A stretch of 64,000 nt of DNA, taken from positions 12,824,722 through 12,888,721 of the forward strand of contig OZ037766.1 of NCBI GenBank assembly GCA_964035545.1. The letters are read 5' to 3'. The stretch comes from Bugula neritina (taxonomy: Eukaryota > Animalia > Bryozoa). This document shows positions 3,492-21,206 of this stretch, one piece after another. The stretch's first letter is position 1. Each line of letters begins with the position of its first letter. A model generated the notes under the pieces. It ran no database searches and was not told where the DNA came from. It saw nothing but the letters and a program-made list of their open reading frames with translations. Made by a program: the position numbers and the translations under genes.

Positions 3492-3503
3492 AGTGCATCC
3501 AAG

Positions 3504-4457
3504 ATGGAGACTGAAAATGCTGGAACTCAACCACCGGCAGTAGAAGGTGAGCGTAGAGACAATGCTGTAGAGACAATGCCTGTTAACCATGTAGTAGAGG
3601 AGCGAAGGGTTCCGCGAGAACTAACTGAAGACCGCTACCGGTTAAAGGCGCCCACCTTCACGGGTGAAGAGGAGGTGGAACAATTTATTCAAGAGTTTAG
3701 CGACGTAATGGACGTCGCCCAGTGGCCCCCTAGGGTGGCCTTGCTGAAGCTTAGAATGGCATTGATGGACAAAGCCAAGCCTTATGGGCTGGGCATAGAC
3801 ATTGATAATATCTTTGCTTCTCTGCGGGCCCGCTTCGGCCTCTCTGCTACAGATGCCAGGGCCCGATTGCAGAGGTTGCGGCGTGATCCCCGCACTCCGC
3901 TGCGGGAGCACGCCGCCGCGGTCATGAAGCTGGCACAGATCGCGTACAGCGACTTGCCCCCAGTCAACCGCGAGAGGTATACCCTCGACGCTTTCATAGC
4001 ATCTGTCGATGATCTGGGTCTCCACCATCAGTTTCTAGCTAGGGGAGTCACCACCGTTGGAGATGCTCTGACTGAGGGGGAAGCTTACCTCCTAGCTAAT
4101 CAAATGCATAAAAGTCGCGGGAGCTCCCGTCAAGTGGAGGTAGACTGCGCGGACACGGCCGCGGGACAAGGGGAGGAAACACCCGCCGCGGCTGCCGTGT
4201 CCCAGTTGGCGACGGCATCGAAAGTCACTCAACTGACAGACATGCTGGCCAAACTGATAGCAACACTGACACCTCAAACCCCAGTGAGTACCGCCATTGA
4301 GCCCGTGCGGCCACCGGCGCCGCCACAGGGAGAAACAGTCAGTTTTTGCTGGGAGTGCGGAAATCAAGGACATTTCCGCCGGTACTGTCCCTTCCTAAAT
4401 CAGGGGTTAAATTACCGCGGCCCGCAGATGTTCCCACCTCTTGCGGGCCGACGATGA
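3504..4457 (+). CDS. gag: Gag with CCHC zinc knuckle
   Basis: 317-aa ORF; capsid-like region (APTFTG...EQFI) and CWECGNQGHFRRYC knuckle. Confidence 0.92.
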   Translation: METENAGTQPPAVEGERRDNAVETMPVNHVVEERRVPRELTEDRYRLKAPTFTGEEEVEQFIQEFSDVMDVAQWPPRVALLKLRMALMDKAKPYGLGIDIDNIFASLRARFGLSATDARARLQRLRRDPRTPLREHAAAVMKLAQIAYSDLPPVNRERYTLDAFIASVDDLGLHHQFLARGVTTVGDALTEGEAYLLANQMHKSRGSSRQVEVDCADTAAGQGEETPAAAAVSQLATASKVTQLTDMLAKLIATLTPQTPVSTAIEPVRPPAPPQGETVSFCWECGNQGHFRRYCPFLNQGLNYRGPQMFPPLAGRR

Positions 4458-7400
4458 AACCTCCAGGGAAGAAGAAACGCAGGTCACCCAGACGGGTACC
4501 GCGTACTGGTAACCAACCGTGGCAACAGCCGCGACGGACCAGCAAGGGGCTCCGCCCCGCCGCTACCTTTTCCATGCCCCTTCACAACAGATTCGCAGGG
4601 CTACAAGCTCAAGAATCTGGATGGGAGCCCACCAAGGTAGCCGGAAATCTAGCCTCGGCACCCCCGAGGCCTACTTACCACCGCCCCAAGAGACCTCCTT
4701 CGCGACCCAAAGCGAGGGAGGTACTCCCTGCGAGAGTAAGGCCTGAAGGGAGAGTTCAGGTGCAGCCCCATGGGAACAGCTATTTCTTGCCCGGTAAACT
4801 GGAAGGCAAAGCTGTTACTTTCCTCATTGATTCGGGCTGCACCACGAACCTCTTGAGCCGCCGACTCTTCGACACCCTCAGTGCTAGGGTCAGGGGCGAA
4901 ATGGAATCATACGAAGGGGAATACGGCACCCTAGCTGACGGGTCGTGCCTTCCCTTCTATGGTATAATTGAGCTGACGGGGCAAGTCCGTGATCAAACGA
5001 TCCAAGAGACGTTCATCGTCAGTCAGCTCAAAGAGGACGCCATCCTCGGGATGCCATTCCTAAAACGGCACGGATGTCACATAGATTTTAGCAAATCTGC
5101 GATGGTGATGTCCGGGCGAGAACTCGCCTGCGTCGACAAGTTCGGCCGCCCTTTAGTGGAAGGTGTGCAAGTGGTACGCAACCGTACCATACCAGGCCGC
5201 TCCCGGGCTACCATTCACTGCAGGGTGAACAATAGCCGGATCTCTGGACTCGGGGTAGTTGAAGGCGCGCACTTGCCAGCAGTCTGAATCAGCTGACTGA
5301 GCAAGGGGAGATCTTAGTGCAGTGCGTCAACCCCTTTACCGAGTCTGTCAAACTTCCGGCTGGGTCGATGCTGGGCCGTTTTCACTCTGTTCAGGAGGAG
5401 GACATAGGCCCGTCGCTGGGTGATGCGACAGAGGCACCTCCTCAGTGCCCTACTCAAGGGCGAGGGGCAGTCCCAGCACATCTCCGGGAGTTGTATGACA
5501 CAGCCTGTAGCGGCTGCGCGAGTAACAAAGAACGCCAAGTTATGGCGAAGTTACTACGCAACTACGGTGATGTGTTCAGCAGCGGAGAGCATGACGTGGG
5601 ACTGACTGGAATTGTCAGACACGAAATACCGCTGACTGCAGGGACAGTCCCTGTCCGGCAGCCCACACGCAGGCTGGGGCCGGAGAAAGAGAAGGAGGTT
5701 AGCCGACAAGTACGGGATCTTCTGGACCGGGGACTGATAAAGCCCGCCCATAGTGCGTGGAGCTCGCCAGTCGTACTGGTCCGGAAGAAAGACGGCAGTT
5801 GGCGGTTCTGTGTGGATTACCGCAAACTCAATAGCGTAACCATACAGGACGCCTACCCTCTACCTCGTATTGACGAGTCATTGGACGCCCTAGCTGGCAG
5901 CAAGTACTTCAGTACGTTAGACTTGCTAAGCGGCTATTGGCAAGTTCCTCTGAGTCCCAACGCCCAGGAGAAAGCGGCGTTTATCACACGGGACGGTTTG
6001 TGGAAGTGGAAGGTGCTGCCTTTCGGGCTGACCTCCGCCCCAGCCACCTTCCAGAGGCTGATGGAACAAGTCCTCAGCGGGCTCCATTGGAAGACACTGC
6101 TGATATACCTCGATGATGTCATCGTGATCTCCCCAGACTTCGAGACGCATGTCGCATGTCGTCGAGAGACTCCGAGGTGCCGGTCTTAAGCTCAAGCCCT
6201 CTAAGTGCGCTCTATTGCAGCCAGAGGTTAAGTACCTGGGGCACGTTGTCGGTCGAAACGGCGTGGCAACGGATCCCGAGAAGGTACGGGCAATAGAAGA
6301 CTGGGTCACCCCCCAAGATTTGACCGGACTCCGGGCTTTCTTGGGGCTGGTAGGGTATTACAGACAATACATACCAGACTTTGCGGGCATAGCACAGCCG
6401 TTAAACCGGCTCACCACAAAGGGAGTGACGTGGCAGTGGACCCCAGTCGAACAAGGAGCGTTCGACCGCCTCAAGGGCTGCCTATTAACGGCGCCCATCT
6501 TGGCCTACCCAGACCCCACTCTGGAGTACATCCTCGACACTGACGCCAGTGACCAAAATGTTGGCGCTGTGCTGTCACAAGTGCAGGAAGGCCGAGAGGT
6601 AGTAGTAGCCTACTACAGCAAGTCTCTCTCACCCACTGAACGGAACTACTGCACTACCCGCAAGGAGTTGCTGGCAGTAATCAAGTCAGTGAAGCACTTC
6701 AGACCATACCTATATGGCAGGAAGTTCCGGCTGCGTACGGATCATGCCTCGCTGATCTGGTTGTGCAAGAGAGCAGAGCCCTCTAGTCAGGTCGCCCGAA
6801 TTCTCATACCGGATCGAACATCGACCGGGCAAGAGACACAGCAATGCGGATGGGTTGAGTCGCCGACCTGACGGAGGTTGCAAACAGTGTCTCAACATCG
6901 CGAAGAGGGATGGAGGTCCCCCGCGATGTGAGTTAGAGACGCTGGCTCACCACGGAGCACCGTTTGATTGGGACCAGGGTCAACTCAGGCAGGGAGTTGA
7001 TGAGTCCCCGGAGGGTGTACAAAACCTCCGCGCTAACCCTGTACTGGCCGGTAATTTTCGAGAGCTGAAGAAGCTCCAAGAAGAGCTGCCTGGAGTCGTG
7101 GCAGACATATATCGGGCCAAAAGGGAAGGGCGACGACCCAGCGAGGAACGCATACGACAGGGATGCGCCGAGTTCCGGCTATACTGTCAGCGTTGGGACT
7201 CGCTGCGGATCGGGCAGGATGGGTTATTAACCATCTCTCTAGCCGCCAGCGGCAAACACCCGGAGAGGAAGAGGGTAGTCTGCCCCACGGCCATTCGCCG
7301 TGAGTTGATATGGGATACTCACAAACAGGCCCACGCAGGGGTCAAGAGAGTGATGTCCAAATTACGACTCCGGTGGTATTGGCCGCAAATGGAGCGTGAC

Positions 7401-8933
7401 GTCCGACTCAGAGTCAAGCAGTGTGAGATCTGCCAGGCCAGTAAGCATAGCCGCCCCCCTGGTGAAGCAGGACGGCGGAGGCTATATGCTGGTAGGCCCT
7501 GGCAAGTAGTCGCTGTAGACCTGGTCGGACCCATGCCCCTGACCCCCAGAGGCAATAATTGGATCCTAGTACTAACCGACCACTTTACTAGGTGGGCGGA
7601 TGCTCTGGCTATCCCAGATGCGTCAGCCCCAACAGTGGCCAGGGCGCTAGACCAACATGTATTCTGTTATTTCGGGCTTCCCGAACAGATACACTCTGAT
7701 CAAGGCGCTCAATTCCAGTCCCAACTGATGAGCGACCTTTGCCACCTCTGGGGAGTAAATCAGAGCCGGACCACCCCCTATCACCCTCAAGGTAACGGGG
7801 TGGTGGAGCGCAACAACCGGATGCTAGGTGATGCGCTCCGAAGTCTCCTCCTTGGACGAGGCCAAGAGGAATGGGATACGGTGCTGCCGCAAGTCATGCG
7901 TGCATACCGTAGCACCCCACACACCAGTACTGGTGAGACCCCAAACCTCTTGATGCTCGGGAGAGAGACTCGTGTCCCTGACCATCTCACCTACCACGTT
8001 CCAGAGCGAGACAACTCGGTTCACGAGTATGCCAGTGAACTATTGGAACGGATGAAGGCCGCACACGAGATACTGCGCAAACAGCAGTGGAAGGTGCGGC
8101 ACGAAGATTCCGATGAACCACCTCTCTACCAAGCGGGAGATAAGGTGTGGATGGTCAATTACCGTAGGCATCGTGAACAGGCTGATAAACTGTAGCCTAA
8201 GTTCGTAGGACCCTACGTGATCGTCGAGGCTATGCCCAATCATACGTACAAGATTGAGCGCTCAGGACAGGAGTCTATCCAGAATGAGTCTCGCTTGAAA
8301 CCGTATTGGGCTAGCCCCGACGGAGTGGGAGAAGCCCCCCCTATGTTGGAGCCCAGGAGGCAGACAACAACGCGCGGGCAACGGCGGCATGGACCTGAAT
8401 ACGAAGTGGTCATACCGCGGGAAGAAAACTTGGTGAGAGAGGAGCGGCAGCTTTTGTCAACAGAAGCGTTTCCGCCACCGCCAAGTCTAATTCCATCACT
8501 TCCAGAAACCGAGCCGGTTCCGGAAGTGCAAACCCCCACGGAGGGAGGGGCTCCATCCGGAGAACAAGAAGAAGTGACCGCTAACGGTGAAGTAGAGACG
8601 CCATTAGAGGCCCCTACTAACGAACCGGCAAGCATGTCACCCCCCCTAGAAAGGGGGCAGCGTACGAGGCAACCCCCCGCATACTTGAAAGACTTTGTAT
8701 GCGACTGCGTTAGAAGCGGCGCGTATGAAAGTCTAGGGGAAAACCGTACGAGAAAAGTATCGAGCAAATGTGGGAGTTGTCAACACCACGAAAATATCAA
8801 CTTTTGTATCGGCAGAAATAGAAATGAAATTCATCCGCCGGGTGCACAAAGTCTTAATCACGCACCCCAACCACGTTGCTCGATCTTTTCATACGCTGAT
8901 GCAGTCAGGAGTAGACGTGTTTCTAAGCAATAG
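4406..8933 (+). pseudogene. pol: Pol polyprotein (aspartic protease, RT, RNase H, integrase) broken by three frameshifts and one nonsense codon
   Basis: LIDSG protease; RFCVDYRKLN, LPFGL and YLDD RT motifs; TDAS RNase H; HHCC and D,D,E integrase (VDLVG, SDQG, VERNN). Frame breaks near 5271, 6155 and 6798; TAG at 8193-8195 in KL*PKFVGPY. Confidence 0.93.
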
Positions 8934-9248
8934 TTCAAACCATTTCACACATTCAGTATGTCTTACGACAACAGATCGTGGGGTGAGTTAACTATATCTT
9001 AATATAGAAACTAGATTGCATCGCTCAGCTCCGACTCACTGAGTCAATCGAGCTGGAGATAGGTTAGTGAAATACCGTAGTAAGAACTCAGTTTGACTTA
9101 GAGATTTTTATAATCTCATTGCAATACGTGTTCTATCTGACTATTCACTACCATAAATCTCTACGAGGTAACTGAATGAGGAGTTGCCAAGCTATTCAAG
9201 CTGACAACACGACAGTGTACTGTACTAACACTGTTGAAACTTTTTCAG

Positions 9249-10026
9249 ATTACACTCGACCCGCCACAACCAGGGTACGGGATAGAGCACTTCCCCCTCC
9301 GCATCCTGAGGAGTATGCTAATGGTGAACGGCCAGAACCACTGCGCCGCCGTTGGCGGTGGGTGTCTCCAGAAACAGAAGAGGAAATAGAGACGGCCTGG
9401 GGGTCCAGAGGACGGACGAGATGCCAGATTTGTGGCGAAGAATGTGCCTCTCACCGCTCCTTGAAGCTACATGTCAATGCTCATCTCCTACTCACATTCT
9501 GCCCCTGCGGGTACAATGATGTTTACCCCTACCCCGTCACCAGACATCGAGCGGCGGGCTGTTTCCCTGGAGAAAACTATGTGGTCGACGCTAAGCTCTA
9601 CCCGGAATTCCTCACCCTGATACGACTCCTAGTAAAGAAGGCAATGCTGCTAGCCGTCCTGACCTCGGGTTTCCAGCGTGTGCTAGACAATGCCAGGCAG
9701 CAATCCCCATTGGTATCTGACCGTCCTCAGATTACGTACACCCCCGAGGAGTTTGCCTATCCAGAAGAAGGAGAGATCTCCCCTACCCCGACGAAGAGAC
9801 GAACCAGGTCTCCCAGTCCCCCCTTACGCCGCAGACGGACACCGTCCCCAGACCCAGTTCGCCTGGCTACAGTAGAGGAACGCCTCCTCCGACTACAAGA
9901 AGAATTCAGTTGGCACCAGATTTACTTAATACTACAACAGGGCTCTTCCAACTAAAAGGATCCGTATGCCGGATGAAACGGAAGCTGCGTACATGCCAAG
10001 CCAAGCACCGGCGTGCACAACAATGA
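9249..10026 (+). CDS. Extra ORF in the env position: C2H2 zinc finger, RSPSP/Arg-rich tract and coiled coil; probably spliced, with a frameshift near 9906
   Basis: ORF 9176-9955 has CQICGEECASHRSLKLHVNAH and RRTRSPSPPLRRRRTPSP. Acceptor ttttcag ends at 9248. A shifted frame continues QLAPDLLNTTTGLFQLKGSVCRMKRKLRTCQAKHRRAQQ* to 10026. Confidence 0.7.
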
Positions 10027-10301
10027 CTCTGGTTCTGCTACCCGGAATAATCCGCAACTTCGTCCTCTTGGGAGAACCCAGGATATCGTGCAAATGCTTG
10101 ACTGCTCGACAGGCTCACTCCTTGTCCAATACCACAGCTAGCCGGTATTCCTCATCTATAGCTGGTCAATTGTATGTAAACGGTTGTTATAATGACTCTG
10201 TCTGTTATTATGTATCTTTAGGTGTATTATGTATTATTTTGGTCTACTGTTGTATGTGGTTAATAATGAACATTTTTTTTATATCAGAAAGAGGGCTTTC
10301 T

Positions 10302-10315
10302 GCTGGTGGGGGCGG
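10302..10315 (+). promoter_or_regulatory. G-rich polypurine-tract-like primer
   Basis: gctggtgggggcgg immediately upstream of the 3' LTR. Confidence 0.6.
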
Positions 10316-10621
10316 TGTGGTGGCTCGTGGAGCTACCAGCAGCACAACATGTGGGGTCGCGTAATTGACCCGGAACAATTGATAGCCAATTAGCGTGTTT
10401 AATAGTTAGCAGCAATTGTAGTTTCCTGCTGCTAAGTCAGTCGAAGTTAGAGTGCTGAATAGACTAGATGTGTAACTTGTCAGATGTATTTGTATCGTTT
10501 TTATAATGTATTGTTGTGTGTAAAATATATACTCGTTCACTCGACTTAACCTGGTGCAGTTCTATCAAAGTAATTAGACTCTCTGGATAGCATATCAACC
10601 CTAAATCTGAAAAACATAACA
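10316..10621 (+). repeat. 3' LTR (306 bp)
   Basis: Direct repeat of 3167-3472, followed by TSD ATAA. Confidence 0.97.
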
Positions 10622-11261
10622 ATAAAGTGTTTTTATAAAATATGGCATCTATCACACAGAGAAATATCTAATACGGTACGCAATTATATAAAATAATATT
10701 ATAAAGATACTATAGTATTGAAAGTATATTATAGAATATAATGTTATAAAATGTAATCATAATAAAGTTTGAAAGCAGTCAATTTGATAATTAATTGTGT
10801 GTAGAAAATTAAGTGATGCTCAAAGTTGATGCACAGTCTTTCTATACTATGATAAAAACATGCCACTCAAATGTTAAAAACCAGAAATTTGTGTGAGTTC
10901 TATGTATGAAATCTCAGCTATAATAAGTGTTCTAGAAAATATGTCATCTGTCATATACTAAAACATTTCTAATACAATATATAAATTCTTATATAGAAAC
11001 AATATAAATTTGACAGTTACTATACAAAGCTTAGTATAATAGAATTATGACAATATGCATAGATTACATGGTATGGTTGTATATTAAGTATAGAATGTGT
11101 TTTGTGACAGTAATTAATAATCAAAAGCTAACAAAAGCAGACGTATGTATAGAGCTCAGGCTGCTATTTCCATCTCATTGTATACTATAAGGTTGCAGGC
11201 AATCTGTTTTTAACTTACAAATGAAAATATTTTTCTCTTCACATTACTTTCATTTCAGTTC

Positions 11262-14200
11262 TTATGACACATCGAAAAGTGATGAGTCATCAAAATGGCC
11301 GTCTGTAACAAGCTGAAAATACCTTTCTTGAGAGAAGAGCTCAATGTTGGCTACTTGATGTGGATAATCACACTCAATGTTCTTGAATGCTTGACTCAGC
11401 ACCACAGCCTGGTAGATGGGACCATCAAATCCTGGGATGTGTTCACTGTCTTTTACATAGCCAACAAACAATCCAGTTGGCCTAAACTCAGCTCCAATCT
11501 TCACATAGACTAAGCTCCCACAATCTCCTTCAATCAGTTTCCTTCAAGACAACATATTATTAATCAAAATATTATTTAAATCAAAGTGAACCTATTTAAA
11601 CTCAGACAAGCAATAGTATAGTTTTATTATTTCTGTGTTTTTTTTTCAAACTATTAAGACTATGATATGTTTTTCATATTTGAAGTAACTTATTAAAACA
11701 TTTTAAAGTATAATGCCTGTCACTTAACCAACTCAACTTACAACTCAGCTTCCGCTGTGACTGCTGATACCAACACAAAGGTCATGTGTTGTCCTAGTTT
11801 TTGTCCATTTCTTTGAAATCGTCTGGTAACTATTCTCCCTAGCATTCCCTTAACCATCACATTTCTTCCAGTCAGCTGATGCAAATCTTTTTCAGTGGGG
11901 ATCTGCAAAAGTTTTGTTGAAAATGGGCTTTCTTGTTTTCGAATCCCATTCATATTATTTGCAGCAATCTCTTCGAAGAAACTTTGCAACTTTTTATCTA
12001 AGAGCTTTTGTAAACATGAGGCCTGCTTGTGATTGATTGAGAAGAGTGCCAAGTCATTCATGAACTTGTGAGGACATTGTGATATATATTGAGGATCACA
12101 ACTTAGTTCTGGACATTCCCATTGCGGTTGTGACTCACTGCTAGACGTAAGTCGAGTGTACCAGTGACGGTAACTAAGCAACACTGGATGCTCCAATTCC
12201 CCAACTTTGCTGCTCTTTTGATTTTCAGTTTTTATGTAGTATTGCCTCCTTGTAGAGCGACTTTCTACTTCTGCTCTCACTCTTGAAATTGCAGACATAT
12301 TTTCATCATCGCTGTCAACATCGTGCACTTGGTCATGGTTTTGATCATTTTTTTTTTCATTGTTCTGATCGTTTGCCGGTTCTGTACCGGAGGGTTTCTT
12401 TGATGGACCCGCTAGTTGGCAACTGTAGGCAAGGGCGTTTTCAAGATTTAGCTCAGTTCTGTCCTCATGCATAGCAGTCTGCTTCATATAAAAGCTATCA
12501 GCTGCAGCTGCTTCTTCATTTTGCTTGTGAGCAAGAACCAGATGTGCTGGAGCCACTGCGTAGACTCTCTTATAAGGCTTATTGTAGTTAGCGCATTTCC
12601 TTTCAGCAATAACAAATGCTTCACAGACAGTCTGCTTTACTGAGTCTCCCCACAGCTTTTCATTCTTTGCAGCTTTCTTTTTGTTGATAGTCAGAATCTT
12701 CTCCCAGCTGAGGGTCTTCATTGTGAATGGATTGTTATTATTTTTCAAAGTTATCTCAAACTTAGTGAGTAATTCACTGTGCAGGTACGTCTGGAGTTTG
12801 GACTGAATTATTGAAACATCTTTTCCAAGTACCAAGATTTTCCTCCAATCAATAGCAGACTGACCAAATGTAAAATCACTTATGTTGTGACTGTCGAGAA
12901 GTCTAAAAGTAAAGACATGGTAAAAAACACACAAAACTAAAAAACATGAATGAACCATTTCAGTTAACAATATCCATAAACTCAAATGTGTTCTTATAAG
13001 AACACTAATATATGTATAACCTTTCAATCAAACTGTGGAGTTCCACGCAATTTAATAACACAATAATAATAAGGAAAGTAACCTCTCAATAGCATTTATT
13101 AGAGACTCGGGTGCAGGTTCATAAGGTGCATCTGAAGACAACTCTCCAGTTACAGGGTTCAGTATCACAGGTTCTACAATTAGTTTTTGTATGGCAAACA
13201 AAACATTTAAATAAAATAAAATACATTTCCCAATCAAAATTTATGTCTCAACATTTATGATCTACAAGATTCAAGCAGAAAAGCTATTTTTAATAAGAAT
13301 TTTCAATAAGTGAAAGTGAACCTACACAGTATATGTACAAGAAAGTAACCATCTTCGTTTTTATAGAATAATCAAAGAAGTCTGCAATTTTGGCTTTGCT
13401 GTACTGTGTTTAGTACTATAACTATCTTAATTTATGATAGTATTGCTTATAATTGTTATTGGAACCGGTTGAAAATGAAATTATAGGAACATTTGGCTAA
13501 GCTGACATATCAAATGTTGAGAACAAGTATAGGCTATTGAAAATTTAACAACACTATTTAGCTTCAAATCTAAATTATTTCTCTTAGACTATGTAACAAT
13601 TATTATGCAAACAAAATATGCATGATGAGGTCACATAGTGATAGTTGAAGAATGCCTGTAATATATAAAATAAAATATCCCCTACATAACAAAACCTAGA
13701 ATAATTATAATACACTGTATCTCACCACTGTTATCTGATAGACTCATAGACTTTTCTTCCACTTGATCATCTGCAGCAGTGTTTTGAGTTACAGTGTCAG
13801 CTGGTGTGCTCACATCTGATGCTGAAAAAAAGTTAGTATTATTAAGTCTTAATAGCTGCCATTACATTAGCACTTAATTTAGTACTCACTTCAATAGAAA
13901 ATTGAAATAGAAAATAGGAATTAGTCTAAGCTCATACACATGATACAATACATAATTATAGTAAATTGTCCTTCATTTTGTATTTTTATTACTGAAGAAT
14001 TCAATATTTCATTCTAGTTATGAAACCAGAGTTATGTGATATATCATTTAGTAGCTGTCAAAGATCATTCAGTAGAACTTTAGAAGGTAAGCATTGACAA
14101 CAGCAAAAGTTGCTAATGGCTTTAATTTAAACTGCTTCAAGCACTATAAGAGACAGGTGCAACAAAAAAGAAATGATTAACAGAGATGTTTAGGTAAAAA

Positions 14201-17200
14201 AGCAATAATTGTGAAAGTGTCAGCATTACAAAGAAGTTCATTAGTGATAACCTTTAAGCCAAGAGAGTTCAGTAAACAAAGCCATAAAAACAGCCAACAG
14301 CCATATAATTATATATAGTAGCTCTGGTAATCATTTATATTAAAAGAAATATATCAACAGTCTACACCATTGGGAATTACGTCTGATTTATACTATTATA
14401 CTATATCCAAGGAAGTTAAACCATTTAAGTGTTGCAGTTGTTACCAATGTATGTTTAGTCAGAACAGCTATAATTATATGCAACAAAGTGAAAACAATCA
14501 ACAGCAAACCATAAATAAAATTGAATATAGGGACTTTAGCTTGCAAAAGGACTATATATACAAAGTTATATATTGTATTTGAGAAATAATGTACTCCTAG
14601 TTGAAAAAAAGTTTGTGGAAAACAAAGAAAATATTTAATAAAATTTTAGAAATGTTATGAGAAAAAGTTTAGCAGACTACAATACTTAAAACATCAAATA
14701 TGCAATAATGAGAACAGATAGCGGACAATGTCAGTTCAAAAGAGAACAACGCTGCATGCATGTGAAGATAGCAATGCGTTATAATACAACAAAACATTAA
14801 AATAGAAACTTGGTAAACCATACTTTCATCAGCAGGTGATGCAGCCCTTTCTTCTTGTTCTTCTGGCAAAGTCTCCCAGTCTGGTTCATTTGCGTAGTAA
14901 AATAAGTTCAGAGCATGCTGCAGTTCCTCTGTAGAAGTTAATTTGTGGACAATTAGGAAAATATTGGAGAAGATGTTAGAAATGCAGCATTTTTATAAAA
15001 GTAATTTGCCAGACTACAAAGTTTGAATCATCAAAATATATAGGAGTGACAACAGACAGTAGATAAAAATAATCTGCCAGCAATTATATAATATACTGAA
15101 ATAATTATAGTAAATAGTAAATCATACTTTCATAATAATCCCTTATTCTTTCTTGTTTCTCTAATTCTTTTCTAATCATGCTGCTTGCTGTGGCATGACT
15201 TTCAAATCCAGAGTCAGCTATGCTCATAGTCGGCATCTCTGTAAAAAAACATATCATTTTGTTGTCCTTCTATAGTAGAAAAATAAATTGTCAACAACTA
15301 AGAAAATATTTCAGGTAAGAAAATCTTGGAATGGCAATTATATTTTTGTAAAGATATTCACAACATAAAATATAAAATTTGACAACAGATAGTGGAGAAT
15401 GCCAGTGCAAGAGAAGTAACACCCATTCAGAGTTAATTATAATTAGGCTTATAGCAATATGCTACAGTAGAAATAGAAACTTTGAAAATCGTACCTCTAT
15501 CAAAAAGCCTATAAGCAGAACTTCTTTGTCCTTCTGATCCAGTAATGCTGTCTGCTGTCGCAGCATTTTGAAATCTCAAATCATGCTTCAACTCCAAGGC
15601 CTGCCCTACTAATACTGAAGTAAATTTATAAATGAGAATTGTGTGAGGTACAATAACTCCACAAAGCAGAAATTATTATGTTTTTGTTTGCATTGGCTAG
15701 CATATCTAATATATCTAGTATATCTAGTTATGTAACTAACTCGAGATTTGCAAACTCTGCAATCGATGTCTGCACGCAATCAAAGGGTTTTTTATGAAAA
15801 CATGTAAAGCAGTATAGAATAAAATGTTAATAGTTATAGAGCATGTATTTCTTCCAGAAGCAACCATTGATATTCAACTTTACAATGAGATGAGACTATA
15901 TAACTATAAGAAAGCAAAATCCTGTCTTAATTTATTTGCTTTGCACGAAGACCAAGACCAAGACCAATCCGAAGGCTTTTATTTTTTGGCTTTAAAACAG
16001 ATTCAGACTGAATATAATTAGCTTTTACTCTGTTTTTAAAAGAGCTCCTTAATTGAGTCAATTGCTCCGCATATTATGAACAAGTATTTCTATAATTCAA
16101 AAGATAATAATGTTGCGTAGTTTAGAAAAATATTTTTTTGTAGGCTGCTATAAGCTTTAAGCTCTTTCATCTTTTGAAAAGAGATTTTTATTTAAATTTA
16201 CAAAGCTCTTTATATATAACCCGCCATTTTGCTGTGATATATTACTTTGTTTATACAACCATCGAAATTCAAATAAAATATACAAATTATCAATACACAC
16301 TGCATTTTATTATCATGTTCAGTAACGCTTGAAATAACGAATTTCAAAGATATTTTTGAAAGCTGTTTCCTGTCCTCGATCTTCACTATTGTCAAAAATT
16401 TTAAATATTGAAGAAATATGGATATCTAGATATACCACTGCAGTAAAATCTGACAGAGTGTAAAAATCACTAAATAACAGACATGAGCAGTGCAGGTGTA
16501 TCTCAAAGAAAAATAGCTGCTAGTTTAGAACTTATGGCTATCTTACCTTCATCTAGGGTGGACTGTCTGGTTTTATATCTATCAGATGCACTCTTCTTTA
16601 TGCTGAAAAGCTTCCCGATTTCATCTGCTGATATTCTTTCAACTATGCTTTTTATTAGTTTTGAATGACCATTAAATGTGATTATATGTATAACTGTTTC
16701 ACCATAATTATTCTGGAGAGTGAGCAAATCTGTCAAGTCAGCTGCTTGTACAGAGTCTAGAATACATTTCACTGTCTCTGTATGACCTCTTTCTGCTGCT
16801 CTGTGTACAGCTGTATAACCAGGGCTATTCTCTATACTGAGTAGTTTGTACAAGTCAGCTTCTGGTACAGAGTCTAGAATACATTTCACTGTCTCTGTAT
16901 GACCTCCTTCTGCTGCTCTGTGTACAGCTGTATCACCAAACCTAGCTTGTATACTGAGTAGTTTGTACAGGTCAGCTGCTGGTACAGAGTCTAGAATACA
17001 TTTCACTGTCTCTGTATGACCTCCTTCTGCTGCTCTGTGTACAGCTGTATCACCAAACCTAGCTTGTATACTGAGTAGTTTGTACCAGTCAGCTGCTGGT
17101 ACAGAGTCTAGAATACATTTCACTGTCTCTGTATGCCCTCTTTCTGCTGCTCTGTGTACAGCTGTATAACCAGGGCTATTCTCTATACTGAGTAGTTTGT

Positions 17201-18912
17201 ACAAGTCAGATGTTGGTACAGAGTCTAGAATACATTTCACTGTCTCTGTATGACCTCCTTCTGCTGCACTGTGTACAGCTGCATTACCATCTCTATTTTG
17301 TGAACTGAGTAGTTTATACCAGTCAGCCGCTAGTACAGAGTTTAGAATGCATTTCACTGTCCCTGTATGACCTCTTATTGCTGCACTGTGTACAGGTGTA
17401 TTACCATCTCTATTTTGGTGACTAGTCAATATTCCGAAGGCCCATTAGTCCGAAGGTCCATTAGTCCGAAGGTCCATTAGTCCGAAAATTAGTACACATG
17501 ATAGTAAATAGCATCCTCACTGAGAATATCATTGATTTCACTCACAATCTAGTTTAAGTTCTTGCTTTGTTAAAGCTGTATGTGGGTGGCATGCGTGTTG
17601 CCTACTTGTGATTGTTTAGCCTGAGATTACACTATGACTAGAAAACAGCTGCATCATCTATCAACATTCCATTGCGGCTGCTTTATAAACAAAGTACACA
17701 GCAAGCTATTCACTAGCCTGTCAGCTAACAGGCCTGTAATTAATAATGTAATAAAGATCACATTTGCAATGTATAAATCACTTATATTTTATAGAAAGTC
17801 TATAAAAGCTATTGAAAATTTCAAAGAAGTTGCTTTGAGGAACAGAAAGATCTACAACATGGTTTTTAAATTTCGATTCTATAGCACAATTAGGTGAGGT
17901 TTTATTTGGCTGGACTGAATTCTTATATACTAATAGTGTGGCCCCAGCAAGGTAGTTACAGCTAGAAGGTTGCCCTTATCTACATATCTTGTGGATATGC
18001 TTGGTTTGGTATATTATGGTGTGCAGTTTTGGTTATTCGATTTTAGAGTAGTGTCCAGGATGTTTATAATTTTTAGTCTTCAATGCATTTTTACAGATAT
18101 CCCTAATTAAAGATATTTTTAATTACAAAGAGATATTTTCAATTGAAATGGATATATGTATAATTTAATTAATATAATAATGCAGTTTAGCAGCTTACAG
18201 ATAATTGAAGAGATTAAATGTGATACCAAATAATTAACTACCAAGCCAGAGATTTACTATTACATTCAATAGTAAAATTCTAAAACAAACCATGCATTAT
18301 TTTTTTGACGCTAACTTCAAATGCAACTTTTTTTTATAAGTTATGAGGTGCCCGTAATTTTTTACAAAAATACAGTACAGTAGACACAAAATGTTTGCTT
18401 GGCTTTAATTTTACCGGTTTCATGTTTCTTATACTTTAGTTTTTCAGTTTTTAGTCAACATTAAGGGCCTATATAAGCTGACTGACTGTAGCTAGAATAG
18501 AATTACAGTCCCCTGTCATTTTTACACTAACTGTAAAATAAGTTATACTAATTAAATGCCAGTAAATTATATAAAAATAGCCAAAGACAAACAGATAATA
18601 AAAAAACTAATAGAAAAAGTTACAATTAACCTATTCTATTGAAGCACATTCCAACATTAAATAAATAATAAATTTTATAAATGATAAAAGGATTTATAAT
18701 GAATTTTTTAAAATTATATTTAGCAAACATCAGTGTATCCTATATGCAAAATTACAATGGTTTGCTAGAAACAACATCGGCATGGTAGTCCCTAGTAACT
18801 TAAGTCCTAAATCGAAACTTGGAGGAAGATTTTACCTATTTACATTTAATTATGAGTAGCCTATACTAGTGCAGGTATGTGTGTGGAGGAGATCGCACAC
18901 GCCCGCACGCAC

Positions 18913-18948
<36 letters not shown>

Positions 18949-21206
18949 TATATATATCTATAAAGGTTGCATTTGGAGTTAGCGTCAAAAAAAAATAATG
19001 GTTTGTTTTAGAATTTTGCTATTGAATGTAATAGTAAATCTCTGGCTTGGTAGTTAATTATTTGGTATCACATTTAATCTCTTCAATTATCTGTAAGCTG
19101 CTAAACTGCATTATTATATTAATTAAATTATACATATATTTATTTCAATTAAAAATATCTCTTTGTAATTAAAAATATCTTTAATTATAGGGATATCTGT
19201 AAAAATGCATTGAAGACTAAAAATTATAAACATCTTGGACACTACTCTAAAATCAAATAACCAAAGCTGCACACCATAATATACCAAACCAAGCATATCC
19301 ACAAGATATGTAGATAAGGGCAACCTTCTAGCTGTAACTACCTTGCTGGGACCACACTATTAGTATATAAGAATTCAGTCCAGCCAAATAAAACCTCACC
19401 TAATTGTGCTATAGAATCAAAATTTAAAAACCATGTTGTAGATCTTTGTGTTCCTCAAAGCAACTTTTTTGAAATTTTCAATAGCTTTTATAGACTTTCT
19501 ATAAAATATAGGTGATTTATACACTGCAAATGTGATCCTTATTACATTATTAATTACAGGCCTGTTAGCTGACAGGCTAGTGAATAGCTTGCTGTGTACT
19601 TTGTTTATAAAGCAGCCGCAATGGAATGTTGATAGATGATGCAGCTGTTTTCTAGTCATAGTGTAATCTCAGGCTAAACAATCACAAGTAGGCAACACGC
19701 ATGCCACCCACATACAGCTTTAACAAAGCAAGAACTTAAACTAGATTGTGAGTGAAATCAATGATATTCTCAGTGAGGATGCTATTTACTATCAAGTGTA
19801 CTAATTTTCGGACTAATGGACCTTCGGACTAATGGACCTTCGGACTAATGGGCCTTCGGAATATTGCTCCGTCCCCCTCTATTTTGTGAACTGAGTAGTT
19901 TGTACCAGTCAGCTGCTGGTACAGGGTCTAGAATACATTTCACTGTTTCTGTATGACCTCCTTCTGCTGCACTGTGTACAGCTGTCTCACCATATTTATC
20001 CTGTATACTGAGTAGTTTGCACAGGTCATCTGCTGGTACAGAGTCTATAATACATTTCACTGTCTTTGTATGACCTCTTTCTGCTGCTCTGTGTACAACT
20101 GTATTACCATCCTCATTCTCCAGACTGAGTAGTTTGTACCAGTCGGCTGCTGGTAAAGAGTCTAGAATACATTTCACTGTCTCTGTATGACCTCCTACTA
20201 CTGCTCTGTGTACAGCTGTATCACCATATTCTTTCTTTATACTGAGTAGTTTGTACAAGTCAGCAGCTGGTACAGAGTTTAGAATACATTTCACTGTCTC
20301 TGTATGACCTCCTTCTGCTGCTCTGTGAACAGCTGTATTACCAGAGTGATTCTGTATACTGAGTAGTTTATACAAGTCAGATGCTGGTACAGAGTCTAGA
20401 ATACATTTCACTGTCTCTGTATGACTTCTCTTTGCTGCTCTGTGTACAACTGTATTACCATCTCTATTCTGTATACTGAGTAGTTTGTACAAGTCAGATG
20501 CTGGTACAGAGTCTAGAATACATTTCGCTGTCTCTGTATGACCTCCTTCTGCTGCACTGTGTACAGCTGTATCATCAAATTTATCCTGTATACTGAGTAG
20601 TTTGTACCAGTCAGCAGCTGGTACAGATTCTAGAATACATTTCACTGTCTCTGTATGACCTCTTTCTGTTGCTCTGTGTACAGCTGTATCACCAGAGTAG
20701 ATATTCTCTATACTGAGTAGTTTGTACAAGTCAGATGCTGGTACAGAGTCTAGAATACATGTCACTGTCTCTGTATGCCCTCTTTCTGCTGCTCTGTGTA
20801 CAACTGTATCACCAAACCTAGCTTGTATACTGAGCAGTTTGTACCAGTCAGCTGCTGGTACAGATTCTAGAATACATTTCACTGTCTCTGTATGACCTCC
20901 TTCTGCTGCTCTGTGTACAGCTGTATCACCAGAGTAGATATTCTGTATACTGAGTAGTTTGTACAGGTCAGCTGCTGGTACAGAGTCTAGAATACATTTC
21001 ACTGTCTCTGTATGACCTCCTTCTGCTGCTATATGCAATACTGTAGTGAAAAAGTTTGTTTTACCTTGGTACGTAAGAAAGTTCTGCATACAAAGTACCT
21101 TCAATCTATCCTCAGTTGACAGAGAAGTCAGTGTCTCTTTGAACTTATCCACATCACCATCTGTAATGTATTCTATTAGCTTTTCCCAAACCTCCTCAAT
21201 TGACAT
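11262..21206 (-). CDS. Ankyrin-repeat (x17) - linker - predicted trypsin-fold cysteine protease gene; 8 exons, 1384 aa when reconstituted; exon 1 interrupted by a transposon
   Basis: Exons on minus: 21206-19877 + 17407-16547, 15614-15495, 15238-15128, 14928-14824, 13821-13726, 13173-13083, 12902-11742, 11541-11262. All introns are GT-AG with matching phases (1,1,1,1,1,2,2). Total 4155 nt with no internal stop. Confidence 0.82.
17417..19876. mobile_element. Non-autonomous foldback / Mutator-like DNA transposon (2460 bp) with ~915-bp inverted arms
   Basis: 9-bp TSD CTCTATTTT (17408-17416 / 19877-19885); GG...CC termini; three subterminal 16-bp repeats (tccgaaggtccattag); arms ~17417-18330 and ~18963-19876; no transposase ORF. 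Removing the element restores the sequence seen in the neighbouring ankyrin unit. Confidence 0.93.
18906..18947 (+). repeat. (CA)n microsatellite in the foldback spacer
   Basis: Direct reading. Confidence 0.95.

What the first reader, a model, noticed from the sequence alone, without database searches (positions are those of the whole stretch)
11262..21206. Hidden 8-exon gene: ankyrin sensor array fused to a trypsin-fold protease with a Cys nucleophile (GDCGS)
Seen: six minus-strand ORF-track fragments plus three unlisted small exons splice through canonical GT-AG junctions into one 1384-aa frame. The last two exons supply YAVAPAHLV (His codon 12544-12542), MNDLALFSI (Asp 12055-12053), GRNVMVKGMLGRIV and IEGDCGSLVY (Cys 11522-11520). 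The GDCGS motif lies upstream of the listed ORF start and is only attached to the rest after splicing 11742 to 11541. Known: His-Asp-GD(S/C)G order is the PA-clan chymotrypsin fold; cellular members usually use Ser, whereas GDCG is typical of picornavirus-like 3C proteases. Inference: there is no signal peptide or TM segment, so this looks like a cytosolic repeat-sensor plus protease-effector, an immune-receptor-like architecture lacking an NLR NTPase. The ~160-aa insert between His and Asp could be regulatory or autocleaved. I do not recognise this architecture as a named family, but cannot confirm novelty without a search.
Basis: partly seen in the sequence, partly recalled or inferred. Interest (0 to 1): 0.92.

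Follow-up and report, generated by a model that had tools for sequence, protein, structure and literature searches.

The report
Bryozoan ankyrin-fused NAL1-like cysteine protease gene
This bryozoan gene joins a long ankyrin-repeat array to a trypsin-fold protease that uses cysteine instead of serine; it belongs to an undescribed, expanded bryozoan family, and this copy is interrupted by a young transposon.

Summary
The motifs, their coordinates and the 11742|11541 splice are real. The C-terminal module has no Pfam or PDB sequence match. An AlphaFold2 model of a Bugula neritina homologue (pLDDT 81.5) is a PA-clan double beta-barrel. Its best structural match is rice NAL1 (Z 14.4-14.6), ahead of HtrA/DegS, FAM111A and viral 3C. 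His, Asp and the nucleophile are kept in all 10 paralogues checked in this genome. Across the family the nucleophile alternates between GDCG, GDSG and GESG, as expected of a live catalytic residue. Only 61 relatives turned up among 1.84 billion representatives, and every named one is from a bryozoan. Partner domains vary: ankyrin, LRR, or a GBP-like GTPase. The ankyrin-protease link is supported by RNA-like contigs of a close relative, by GenBank models, and by collinear paralogues.

- The first "intron" is a 2.46-kb foldback transposon with a 10-bp target duplication, inserted in a single ancestral ankyrin exon. It brings a stop codon, so this allele may be broken.
- I count nine coding segments, eight ancestral exons giving 1381 aa without the transposon, not 1384 aa.
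- The immune-sensor function remains an inference.

First-stage notes s1-467082 and s1-457232 flagged paralogues elsewhere in this genome.

The parts
19877..21206 (-). Ankyrin exon, first part. The ATG is at 21206. It holds an N-terminal leader and about ten 39-residue ankyrin units, and ends in the left copy of the target-site duplication (19886-19877).
   Evidence: Pfam Ank_2 E 2.6e-51; repeat units listed; open frame.
17418..19876 (.). Foldback-type transposon inserted in the ankyrin exon. It carries long inverted arms and three tandem 16-mers at each end, and it brings a TAG stop 11 codons in.
   Evidence: Arms 17427-18304 / 18987-19866 are 96-98% complementary. Exact 10-bp duplication CAAAATAGAG at 19886-19877 and 17417-17408. 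At least 20 copies at 96-100% identity on contigs C1-C9.
16547..17417 (-). Ankyrin exon, second part. The right duplication copy is 17417-17408 and the ancestral frame resumes at 17407. It holds about seven more units and a cap, with a GTAAGA donor at 16546.
   Evidence: Pfam Ank_2 E 4.1e-52. The empty-site frame reads SSQNRDGNTPVH. An RNA-like contig joins it to the next exon.
15495..15605 (-). Linker exon E2, 111 nt.
   Evidence: Joints 16553/15607 (fuzzy) and 15495|15238 (CT..AC on the plus strand, which is canonical) in run X1. The equivalent peptide is present in B. neritina P0071.
15128..15238 (-). Linker exon E3, 111 nt (contains SIADSGFES).
   Evidence: Joint 15495|15238; equivalent peptides in P0006 and P0071; GT..AG.
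14824..14928 (-). Linker exon E4, 105 nt, acidic.
   Evidence: Canonical joint 14824|13821 in X1; equivalents in P0006 and P0071.
13726..13821 (-). Linker exon E5, 96 nt, so skipping it keeps the frame. It is absent from the B. neritina models P0006 and P0071 and may be a cassette exon.
   Evidence: Joints 14824|13821 and about 13729/13174 in X1; missing from P0006 and P0071.
13083..13173 (-). Linker exon E6, 91 nt (contains PVILNPVTGEL).
   Evidence: Joint 13083/12901 in X1; 90% identical to P0006 residues 455-484.
11742..12902 (-). Exon E7. It encodes a small alpha/beta subdomain, the first beta-barrel and the start of the second. Features: His (12544-12542), an acidic low-confidence insert, a C-x4-C-x9-C-x-H motif, and Asp (12055-12053).
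   Evidence: Sixteen own-genome matches. The homologue model covers it with PA-clan matches over residues 54-441.
11262..11541 (-). Exon E8. It encodes GDCGS (Cys 11522-11520), the rest of the second barrel, a C-terminal helix-strand-helix, and the stop codon.
   Evidence: Twenty-three own-genome matches. An X1 contig ends exactly at 11541. The same junction appears in annotated P0003 and P0071.

Best explanation
The locus encodes, on the minus strand, a cytosolic multidomain protein of a Bugula-like cheilostome bryozoan. It has four parts:
- an N-terminal array of about 18 unusually regular 39-residue ankyrin repeats, whose variation is concentrated in the hairpin loop;
- a roughly 170-residue acidic, Ser/Thr-rich linker encoded by five small exons;
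- a small alpha/beta subdomain;
- a PA-clan (chymotrypsin-fold) peptidase domain of the NAL1-like kind with a His-Asp-Cys triad.

Shown here: the fold, the conservation of the three residues, the Ser/Cys interchange at the nucleophile, the ankyrin-protease linkage, the restriction to bryozoans and the expansion of the family, and the transposon insertion.

Inferred: the domain is an active endopeptidase. The repeat array (ankyrin here; LRR or a GBP-like GTPase in relatives) selects what is cleaved or controls when the protease fires. By analogy with NAL1 and FAM111A, the protease may act on a bound target or on itself. Copy number, tandem clusters, partner swapping and variable repeat tips suggest a role in conflict, either innate immunity or allorecognition of a colonial animal. 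I put that at roughly 40%.

In this assembly the single ancestral ankyrin exon is split by a young foldback transposon that introduces a stop codon. This allele is therefore either broken or depends on cryptic splicing of the element.
For: - Gene structure: exon frames are open and phases fit. RNA-like, exon-biased contigs of a 90-95% identical relative bridge E1-E2, E2-E3, E4-E5, E5-E6 and E6-E7, and one ends at 11541.
- Annotated homologues: B. neritina EB796_005942 (P0071, 944 aa) carries the same ankyrin-linker-protease order; EB796_007494 (P0006, truncated within the domain) carries it as far as the protease His.
- Collinear paralogues: L019 has an uninterrupted 803-aa ankyrin frame followed by the same linker exons upstream of its protease exon; L018 and L027 carry same-strand ankyrin ORFs upstream of theirs.
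- Fold: AF2 model of P0003 with pLDDT 81.5 and pTM 0.77. Foldseek's top 19 hits are NAL1, E 6e-7 to 1e-4. VIA-align gives Z 14.6 over 238 residues for NAL1 and Z 11-12 for DegS, HtrA, FAM111A and alpha-lytic protease. An exhaustive search agrees, Z 14.4, with all top 50 being PA-clan proteases. ESM Atlas look-alikes carry Nal1_C, Peptidase_S64, Trypsin_2 or Trypsin.
- Catalytic residues: P0003 has H112, D266 and C378, in a short helix after a strand, at a strand start, and in the loop before a strand. The offsets fit the NAL1 triad H234/D291/S385 (PMC12012508).
- Conservation: the PAH, ND.AL and GDCG motifs are kept in the paralogues. P0031 and P0036 (Cys) and P0050 (Ser) are 65% identical to one another.
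- Family range: 61 hits in 1.84e9 representatives. All named ones are Bugula or Watersipora.
- Partner domains: LRR and GBP.
- Transposon.
Against: - No sequence-level link to any protease family was found: Pfam, PDB sequence searches and a profile search of PDB were all blank.
- hhalign against this genome's own Trypsin_2 protein aligned only 11 columns, at the Asp motif, with probability 0.5%.
- The RNA evidence comes from contigs of a related organism, not this one. Each contig bridges only one or two junctions. The E3-E4 and E7-E8 joints were not among the rows shown.
- No data show how, or whether, transcripts of this allele deal with the transposon.
- Nothing tests activity, substrates or an immune role.
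Confidence: 0.7

Rival explanations
1. This particular locus is a dead allele. The foldback transposon truncates translation after the first ankyrin block, and the downstream protease exons are no longer made as protein. Only the paralogues are functional.
For: There is a TAG stop 11 codons into the element. The element is young and mobile, with 96-100% identical copies. The only in-frame GT..AG pair lies inside the element and has a weak donor.
Against: All downstream exons are still open with intact splice sites and catalytic residues. The insertion is therefore very recent, possibly heterozygous, or tolerated. Transposon-derived introns are known in other eukaryotes (PMC9860276).
Confidence: 0.45
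2. The family is a regulatory or housekeeping protease like plant NAL1. The ankyrin array recruits endogenous substrates such as transcriptional regulators for limited proteolysis, with no role in immunity.
For: NAL1 is the best structural match and is an intracellular protease that degrades regulators within a hexameric cage.
Against: The evidence is circumstantial. The family is lineage-restricted, has at least 16-23 loci with tandem clusters on contig C8, swaps partners among ankyrin, LRR and GBP-like GTPase, and diverges fast, 21-35% identity between subfamilies.
Confidence: 0.3
3. The domain is a pseudo-protease: a binding scaffold that keeps the fold but does not cleave.
For: No activity data exist. 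There are large inserts between His and Asp, and some relatives have GESG instead of GDSG.
Against: His, Asp and a Ser/Cys nucleophile are kept in all full-length members examined, despite 21-35% overall identity. The nucleophile position holds only Ser or Cys.
Confidence: 0.1
4. The protease exon pair is a captured 3C-like protease of a picorna-like virus, that is, an endogenous viral element fused to a host ankyrin gene.
For: GDCG is the picornain-type nucleophile motif. Viral 3C proteases are detectable structural matches, with E 8e-5 to 1e-3.
Against: NAL1 and the cellular HtrA/DegS proteases match better. Family members use Ser as often as Cys. The domain carries a spliceosomal intron at a conserved position and has no flanking helicase or RdRp remnants.
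Confidence: 0.04
5. The ankyrin gene and the protease gene are separate neighbours that gene predictors wrongly merged.
For: Many database entries hold only the protease exon. No single read spans the whole gene.
Against: RNA-like contigs chain the end of the ankyrin exon through the linker exons to exon 7. All phases fit. Ankyrin ORFs lie upstream on the same strand in three further paralogues, one with the same linker exons, and the full order recurs in a B. neritina model. The protease-only entries stop at exon borders, as expected for single-exon ORF calls.
Confidence: 0.07

Closest known systems
Rice NARROW LEAF 1 (NAL1), an intracellular trypsin-like serine protease (PDB 7Y77, 8PMG, 8PML; Pfam Nal1_C PF25819)
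   Same: It is the best structural match: Z 14.4-14.6, 234-241 aligned residues, rmsd about 4 A. The match covers both barrels plus the C-terminal helix-strand-helix, with the triad at corresponding positions. Both proteins are intracellular with no signal peptide.
   Different: Sequence identity is 13-14% and there is no Pfam hit. The nucleophile here is Cys, not Ser. The N-terminal partner is an ankyrin array rather than the NAL1 N-domain. This family also has an acidic insert and a CCCH motif between His and Asp. Oligomeric state is unknown.
FAM111A/FAM111B, mammalian nuclear trypsin-like proteases (FAM111A is an antiviral restriction factor)
   Same: Both are cellular, intracellular PA-clan proteases attached to non-protease N-terminal regions. 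The structural match is Z 11.2-11.7. FAM111A is linked to virus restriction (PMC10469034).
   Different: FAM111 uses a Ser nucleophile and has no repeat array. Identity is 8%, with no detectable sequence relationship.
Picornain 3C and related viral PA-clan cysteine proteases
   Same: His-Asp/Glu-Cys triad on a chymotrypsin fold, with the GDCG motif.
   Different: These are pieces of viral polyproteins, and they are weaker structural matches (E 1e-4 to 1e-3). The bryozoan family is a spliced cellular gene family that also uses Ser.
HtrA/DegS/DegP (S1C) and the Trypsin_2 superfamily
   Same: Core double-barrel match, Z 11-12 over 160-190 residues.
   Different: There is no PDZ domain, no HMM match, and the nucleophile is Cys.
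Repeat-sensor plus effector immune proteins (NLRs; prokaryotic and metazoan conflict systems with trypsin-like effectors, PMC8195603)
   Same: A repeat array (ankyrin or LRR) joined to an enzymatic effector, in an expanded, fast-diverging, partner-swapping family.
   Different: The ankyrin and LRR members have no STAND/NACHT NTPase. The one GTPase partner is GBP-like. Any sensor function is untested.

Membership tests
PA clan (chymotrypsin-fold) peptidases | Two six-stranded beta-barrels | tested here: met
   In the AF2 model of homologue P0003 (pLDDT 81.5), all top 50 of 48,161 PDB representatives are PA-clan proteases, Z 9.9-14.4.
PA clan (chymotrypsin-fold) peptidases | His, Asp and a Ser/Cys nucleophile in that order, in conserved motif contexts | tested here: met
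   PAH, ND.AL and GD[CS]G are conserved in the own-genome paralogues and in Watersipora and Bugula proteins.
PA clan (chymotrypsin-fold) peptidases | The three residues are adjacent in the cleft between the barrels | not testable with these tools
Only the secondary-structure positions and the offsets relative to NAL1 H234/D291/S385 agree.
PA clan (chymotrypsin-fold) peptidases | Peptidase activity | not testable with these tools
   Needs expression and an assay.
NAL1-like (Pfam Nal1_C, PF25819) | Match to the family HMM | tested here: not met
   No Pfam hit for P0003, P0004 or P0005 at E up to 10. The genome-wide PF25819 search was blank, but its controls were silent too, so it is uninformative.
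NAL1-like (Pfam Nal1_C, PF25819) | Structure closer to NAL1 than to other PA-clan proteases, including the C-terminal extension | tested here: met
   Z 14.4-14.6 over 234-241 residues, against at most 11.9 over at most 209 residues for all others.
NAL1-like (Pfam Nal1_C, PF25819) | Serine nucleophile | tested here: not met
   Nine of the ten exon-8 paralogue matches in this genome read GDCG and the tenth GHCG. Ser occurs in Watersipora relatives.
Pfam Trypsin / Trypsin_2 (S1) | Match to the family HMM | tested here: not met
   No hit for exon 7, exon 8 or the homologues. The six-frame PF13365 search of the genome hits other loci only.
Picornain-type viral cysteine proteases (3C-like) | Part of a viral polyprotein or viral genome context | tested here: not met
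   This is a spliced multi-exon cellular gene with ankyrin exons and many paralogues in the genome.
NLR/STAND immune receptors | Central STAND NTPase domain | tested here: not met
   Only ankyrin families hit in the large exons, and nothing hits in exon 7. The five small linker exons (29-36 whole codons each, 111-91 nt) were not scanned against Pfam; they are too short to hold an NTPase domain.
Foldback-type DNA transposon (the insert at 17418-19876) | Long terminal inverted arms, a target-site duplication, and many dispersed near-identical copies | tested here: met
   No transposase was sought.

The most novel reading that the evidence does not exclude
Cheilostome bryozoans have evolved a cellular family of PA-clan proteases that use Cys or Ser interchangeably and work as modular, NTPase-independent cytosolic receptors. 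A variable ankyrin, LRR or GBP-like module would recognise a pathogen or a non-self colony cue, and the NAL1-like protease would be the built-in effector. This would be a new type of animal innate-immune or allorecognition molecule, and (from my recollection of MEROPS, not checked with any tool here) possibly the first cellular cysteine branch of the chymotrypsin clan.
Probability: 0.3. Interest if true: 0.85.

Novelty: new variant of a known kind. Interest (0 to 1): 0.64.

Why it matters
From my own knowledge of MEROPS, which I did not check with a tool, cysteine-nucleophile members of the chymotrypsin clan are catalogued almost only from RNA viruses. A spliced, expanded animal gene family that flips between Ser and Cys among 65%-identical paralogues is a natural experiment on nucleophile exchange.

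The family also links a plant yield gene's protease fold (NAL1) to animals. Its fusions to ankyrin, LRR and GBP-like modules offer a testable candidate for how a colonial invertebrate, one without a well-described receptor repertoire, couples recognition to proteolysis.

The proteins are in GenBank only as hypothetical proteins and have no Pfam family. Defining the family would improve annotation of bryozoan genomes.

The transposon caught inside a coding repeat, with cryptic splice sites at its ends, is a small live case of exon disruption or possible intron birth.

Tried and rejected
- Sequence searches of the protease module found nothing useful. Pfam was blank for exon 7, exon 8, P0003, P0004 and P0005, apart from a sub-threshold DUF3924 hit that I take as chance. 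phmmer and a family profile against PDB sequences gave zero hits.
- hhalign of the family profile against this genome's own Trypsin_2 protein (a TYSND1-like ORF in L013) aligned only the Asp motif, 11 columns at probability 0.5%. That is no support.
- The PF25819 (Nal1_C) six-frame search of the genome was blank, but its control genomes were blank as well, so it is uninformative.
- A profile search of the 5.8-billion-protein set for relatives outside Bryozoa found only bryozoan or unnamed proteins.
- Viral origin was considered and set aside.
- The reading "two separate genes" was considered and set aside.
Exons were searched separately by reference, and annotated homologues were used for folding.
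- Read laying was limited to one call of at most 6,000 letters, so only 11200-16800 was laid. The transposon junctions (17408-19886) have no read evidence.
- The E3-E4 and E7-E8 joints were not among the rows printed.
- The pN/pS figures for repeat positions were computed on positions chosen for being variable, so they are descriptive only.
- Papers: no paper on this family appeared among the listed results of three keyword searches of the library.

Full report
**What organism and locus.** The window is G000:C2:12824722-12888721 of a 216-Mb animal genome. The best named protein matches are from the bryozoan Bugula neritina. Clear orthologue pairs are 91-96% identical at the protein level: P0003 with L003, and P0070 with L012. 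The genome is therefore a close relative of B. neritina, a cheilostome bryozoan.

**Checking the observation.**
- The quoted peptides are present on the minus strand at the stated codons: His 12544-12542, Asp 12055-12053, Cys 11522-11520.
- Exon 7 ends at 11742 before a GTAAGT donor. Exon 8 starts at 11541 after an AG. The split codon TT|G keeps the frame into KLIEGDCGSLVY.
- The two large upstream ORFs are ankyrin arrays (Pfam Ank_2 E 4e-52 and 3e-51).
- No exon translation contains a TM-like segment (maximum Kyte-Doolittle 19-mer mean 1.05), and the N-terminus is acidic, so there is no signal peptide.

**Gene model.** From the sequence and read joints I get these segments:

| Segment | Coordinates (minus strand) | Length |
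|---|---|---|
| E1 | 21206-16547, interrupted (see below) | 2191 nt without the insert |
| E2 | 15605-15495 | 111 nt |
| E3 | 15238-15128 | 111 nt |
| E4 | 14928-14824 | 105 nt |
| E5 | 13821-13726 | 96 nt |
| E6 | 13173-13083 | 91 nt |
| E7 | 12902-11742 | 1161 nt |
| E8 | 11541-11262 | 280 nt |

- All seven introns are GT..AG and all phases fit.
- The ancestral CDS is 4146 nt, or 1381 aa.
- Exons were handled by reference, and annotated homologues served as the spliced proxy.

**Transcript evidence.**
- Only one run with RNA-like behaviour was available: X1, a "symbiont metagenome" RNA-Seq library held as Logan contigs. Its depth is exon-biased, near zero in introns and 35-550 in exons.
- Its contigs are 90-95% identical to the window, so they come from a related Bugula.
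- Its joints support E2|E3 (15495|15238, canonical) and E4|E5 (14824|13821, canonical).
- With fuzzy ends caused by mismatches, they also support E1|E2, E5|E6 and E6|E7.
- The four "between" letters at the E1|E2 joint translate to the B. neritina variant STLVGG seen in P0006. This fixes that joint at 16547|15605.
- One contig stops exactly at 11541.
- E3|E4 and E7|E8 were not among the rows printed.

**Independent support for the linkage.**
- GenBank model EB796_005942 (P0071, 944 aa) has the same order: ankyrin array, E2-, E3-, E4- and E6-like peptides, then the protease module with GDCGS. EB796_007494 (P0006, 583 aa) has the ankyrin array and the E3-, E4- and E6-like peptides but not the E2-like one, and it ends about 60 residues past the protease His, so it holds neither the Asp nor GDCGS.
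- Neither model has E5. E5 is 96 nt, so skipping it keeps the frame, and it may be a cassette exon.
- Three further paralogues in this genome carry ankyrin ORFs on the same strand 2.4-4 kb upstream of their protease exon; the L019 one is also followed by the same linker peptides.

**The first "intron" is a transposon.**
- The 2,459 bp between the ankyrin ORFs (19876-17418) form a foldback element. Its inverted arms, 17427-18304 and 18987-19866, are 96-98% complementary.
- It is flanked by an exact 10-bp direct duplication, CAAAATAGAG.
- It has at least 20 copies at 96-100% identity on contigs C1-C9, out of 747 first-look candidates.
- Deleting the element and one duplication copy restores an in-frame repeat, SSQNR|DGNTPVH. 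The paralogue in L019 has one uninterrupted 803-aa ankyrin frame. E1 was therefore a single exon.
- As assembled, translation stops at a TAG 11 codons into the element.
- An in-frame GT..AG pair exists (TTA|GTCCGA ... GACTAG|T), but it lies within the element and the donor is weak.
- This allele is therefore either broken or relies on splicing out the element. Transposon-derived introns are documented elsewhere (PMC9860276).

**What the C-terminal module is.**
- Sequence methods are blind to it. There were no Pfam hits, no PDB sequence or profile hits, and hhalign to this genome's own Trypsin_2 protein aligned only the Asp motif.
- An AlphaFold2 model of P0003 was built. P0003 has exon-7- and exon-8-equivalents joined by its annotators and is 65-74% identical to the window's exons. 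The model used a 44-sequence family alignment and has mean pLDDT 81.5 and pTM 0.77.
- Foldseek against the PDB returns rice NAL1 as the top 19 hits (E 6e-7 to 1e-4), then senecavirus 3C, complement factor B/C2a and thrombin.
- VIA-align gives Z 14.6 (238 residues, 3.9 A) for NAL1 and Z 11-12 for DegS, HtrA1, Deg2, FAM111A, alpha-lytic protease and elastase.
- The Foldseek-independent scan of 48,161 representatives again puts NAL1 first (Z 14.4, then 13.9). Every one of the top 50 is a PA-clan protease.
- Viral 3C-like proteases in BFVD match more weakly, E 8e-5 or worse.
- ESM Atlas neighbours carry Nal1_C, Peptidase_S64, Trypsin_2 or Trypsin.
- The NAL1 advantage comes from about 50 extra aligned residues. 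These include the helix-strand-helix after the second barrel, which is encoded by exon 8.

**Catalytic residues.**
- In P0003 the residues are H112 (a short helix after a strand), D266 (the first residue of a strand) and C378 (the loop before a strand). These are the canonical PA-clan positions.
- Their offsets within the aligned range match NAL1 H234/D291/S385.
- Most own-genome paralogue hits examined keep PAH (10 of the 12 exon-7 hits; the two without are overlapping loci on one copy), and all keep ND.AL. All ten exon-8 matches keep the Cys: nine as GDCG and one as GHCG.
- In Watersipora subatra the same position reads GDCG, GDSG or GESG. Within a 65%-identical trio, two members have Cys and one has Ser.
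- A position that tolerates only Ser or Cys, amid 21-35% overall identity, is strong evidence for a working nucleophile.
- I could not measure triad distances because coordinates are not exposed.

**Clade-specific features.**
- His-Asp spacing is 53-66 residues in the Watersipora LRR-type and P0037 members, 84-100 in others, and 154-163 in the Bugula clade.
- The extra length is a long helix, a low-confidence acidic stretch (pLDDT 46-70, with DVDSDDEN), and a C-x4-C-x9-C-x-H motif just before the Asp strand.
- In a cytosolic protein that motif could bind zinc. This is my inference only.

**Family range and architecture.**
- HMMER against 1.84 billion representatives found 61 proteins at E 1e-3 or better.
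- Every named one is from Bugula neritina or Watersipora subatra. The rest are unnamed assembly products.
- In this genome, exon 7 has 16 matches and exon 8 has 23, with a tandem cluster at C8:8.80-8.86 Mb.
- Partner domains differ: N-terminal ankyrin (this gene, three further paralogues, P0006, P0070, P0071), C-terminal LRR (P0031, P0036, P0050), an N-terminal GBP-type GTPase (P0022; PF02263 at 29.9 bits against a cut-off of 21.1), or none.

**The ankyrin array.** It consists of about 18 units of 39 residues with a nearly invariant framework. Amino-acid variety concentrates at positions 35-37 and 39 (the hairpin loop) and at 8-9. The transposon landed exactly in one such loop.

**Mechanism.**
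- Shown: a cytosolic ankyrin-linker-protease protein with a NAL1-like PA-clan fold and a conserved His-Asp-Cys set.
- Inferred: it is an active endopeptidase whose repeat module chooses the target or gates activity. NAL1 (a substrate-degrading cage, PMC12012508) and FAM111A (a virus-activated protease, PMC10469034) are the working analogies.
- A conflict role, in immunity or allorecognition, is suggested by family expansion, clustering, partner swapping and variable repeat tips. I put it at about 40%. A NAL1-like regulatory role is the main alternative.

**Novelty.** The proteins exist in GenBank only as hypothetical or uncharacterised entries. No Pfam family covers the module, and no paper on it appeared among the listed results of three keyword searches. 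I class it as a new variant of a known kind: the PA clan, NAL1-like, but with a cellular Cys nucleophile and new fusions. First-stage notes s1-467082 and s1-457232 flagged paralogues elsewhere in this genome, and s1-472361 flagged the ankyrin array.

Noticed in passing
window 17418-19876 (duplication copies at 19886-19877 and 17417-17408): A young foldback-type transposon of 2.46 kb, with arms of about 880 nt, three tandem 16-mers at each end and a central (GT)n tract, inserted in a coding ankyrin repeat. Its end repeats contain GT donors on one side and CTAAT plus AG on the other, so it could in principle be spliced out in the manner of an introner. Larger copies with arms 6.6-9.6 kb apart (C6:1092350-1099509, C1:31404606-31414261, C4:21674206-21681491) may be autonomous.
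   Followed up: partly
window 3500-10500: A GC-rich block (51-57% GC against about 33% in the flanks) is a Ty3/gypsy-like LTR retrotransposon. Aspartyl protease, RT, RNase H and integrase domains sit in successive, differently framed ORFs on the plus strand. A related sequence lies upstream of paralogue L009 (L024). I describe it only.
   Followed up: partly
window 16547-21206: The ankyrin units are 39 residues long, not the canonical 33, with an almost invariant framework. Variety is confined to the loop positions 35-37 and 39 and to positions 8-9. This is the subject of first-stage note s1-472361.
   Followed up: partly
P0022 (Watersipora subatra XP_067940310.1): One family member fuses a guanylate-binding-protein-type GTPase domain and a long helical region to the same protease module. 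Three others carry C-terminal LRR arrays.
   Followed up: partly
L022:4269-7412 (G000:C8, upstream of paralogue L007): A 1048-aa open frame with SCAN, integrase zinc-binding and rve domains lies between paralogues in the C8 tandem cluster. It is a retroelement or a domesticated integrase.
   Followed up: no
L013:1312-2766 (G000:C1:9881649-9883103): A single-exon 484-aa ORF with a canonical Trypsin_2 domain and a Ser nucleophile (GSSGG), resembling TYSND1. It was used as the in-genome comparison for hhalign.
   Followed up: no
window 56001-58000: A strong GC-skew excursion (-0.43) appears in the composition profile. I did not examine it.
   Followed up: no
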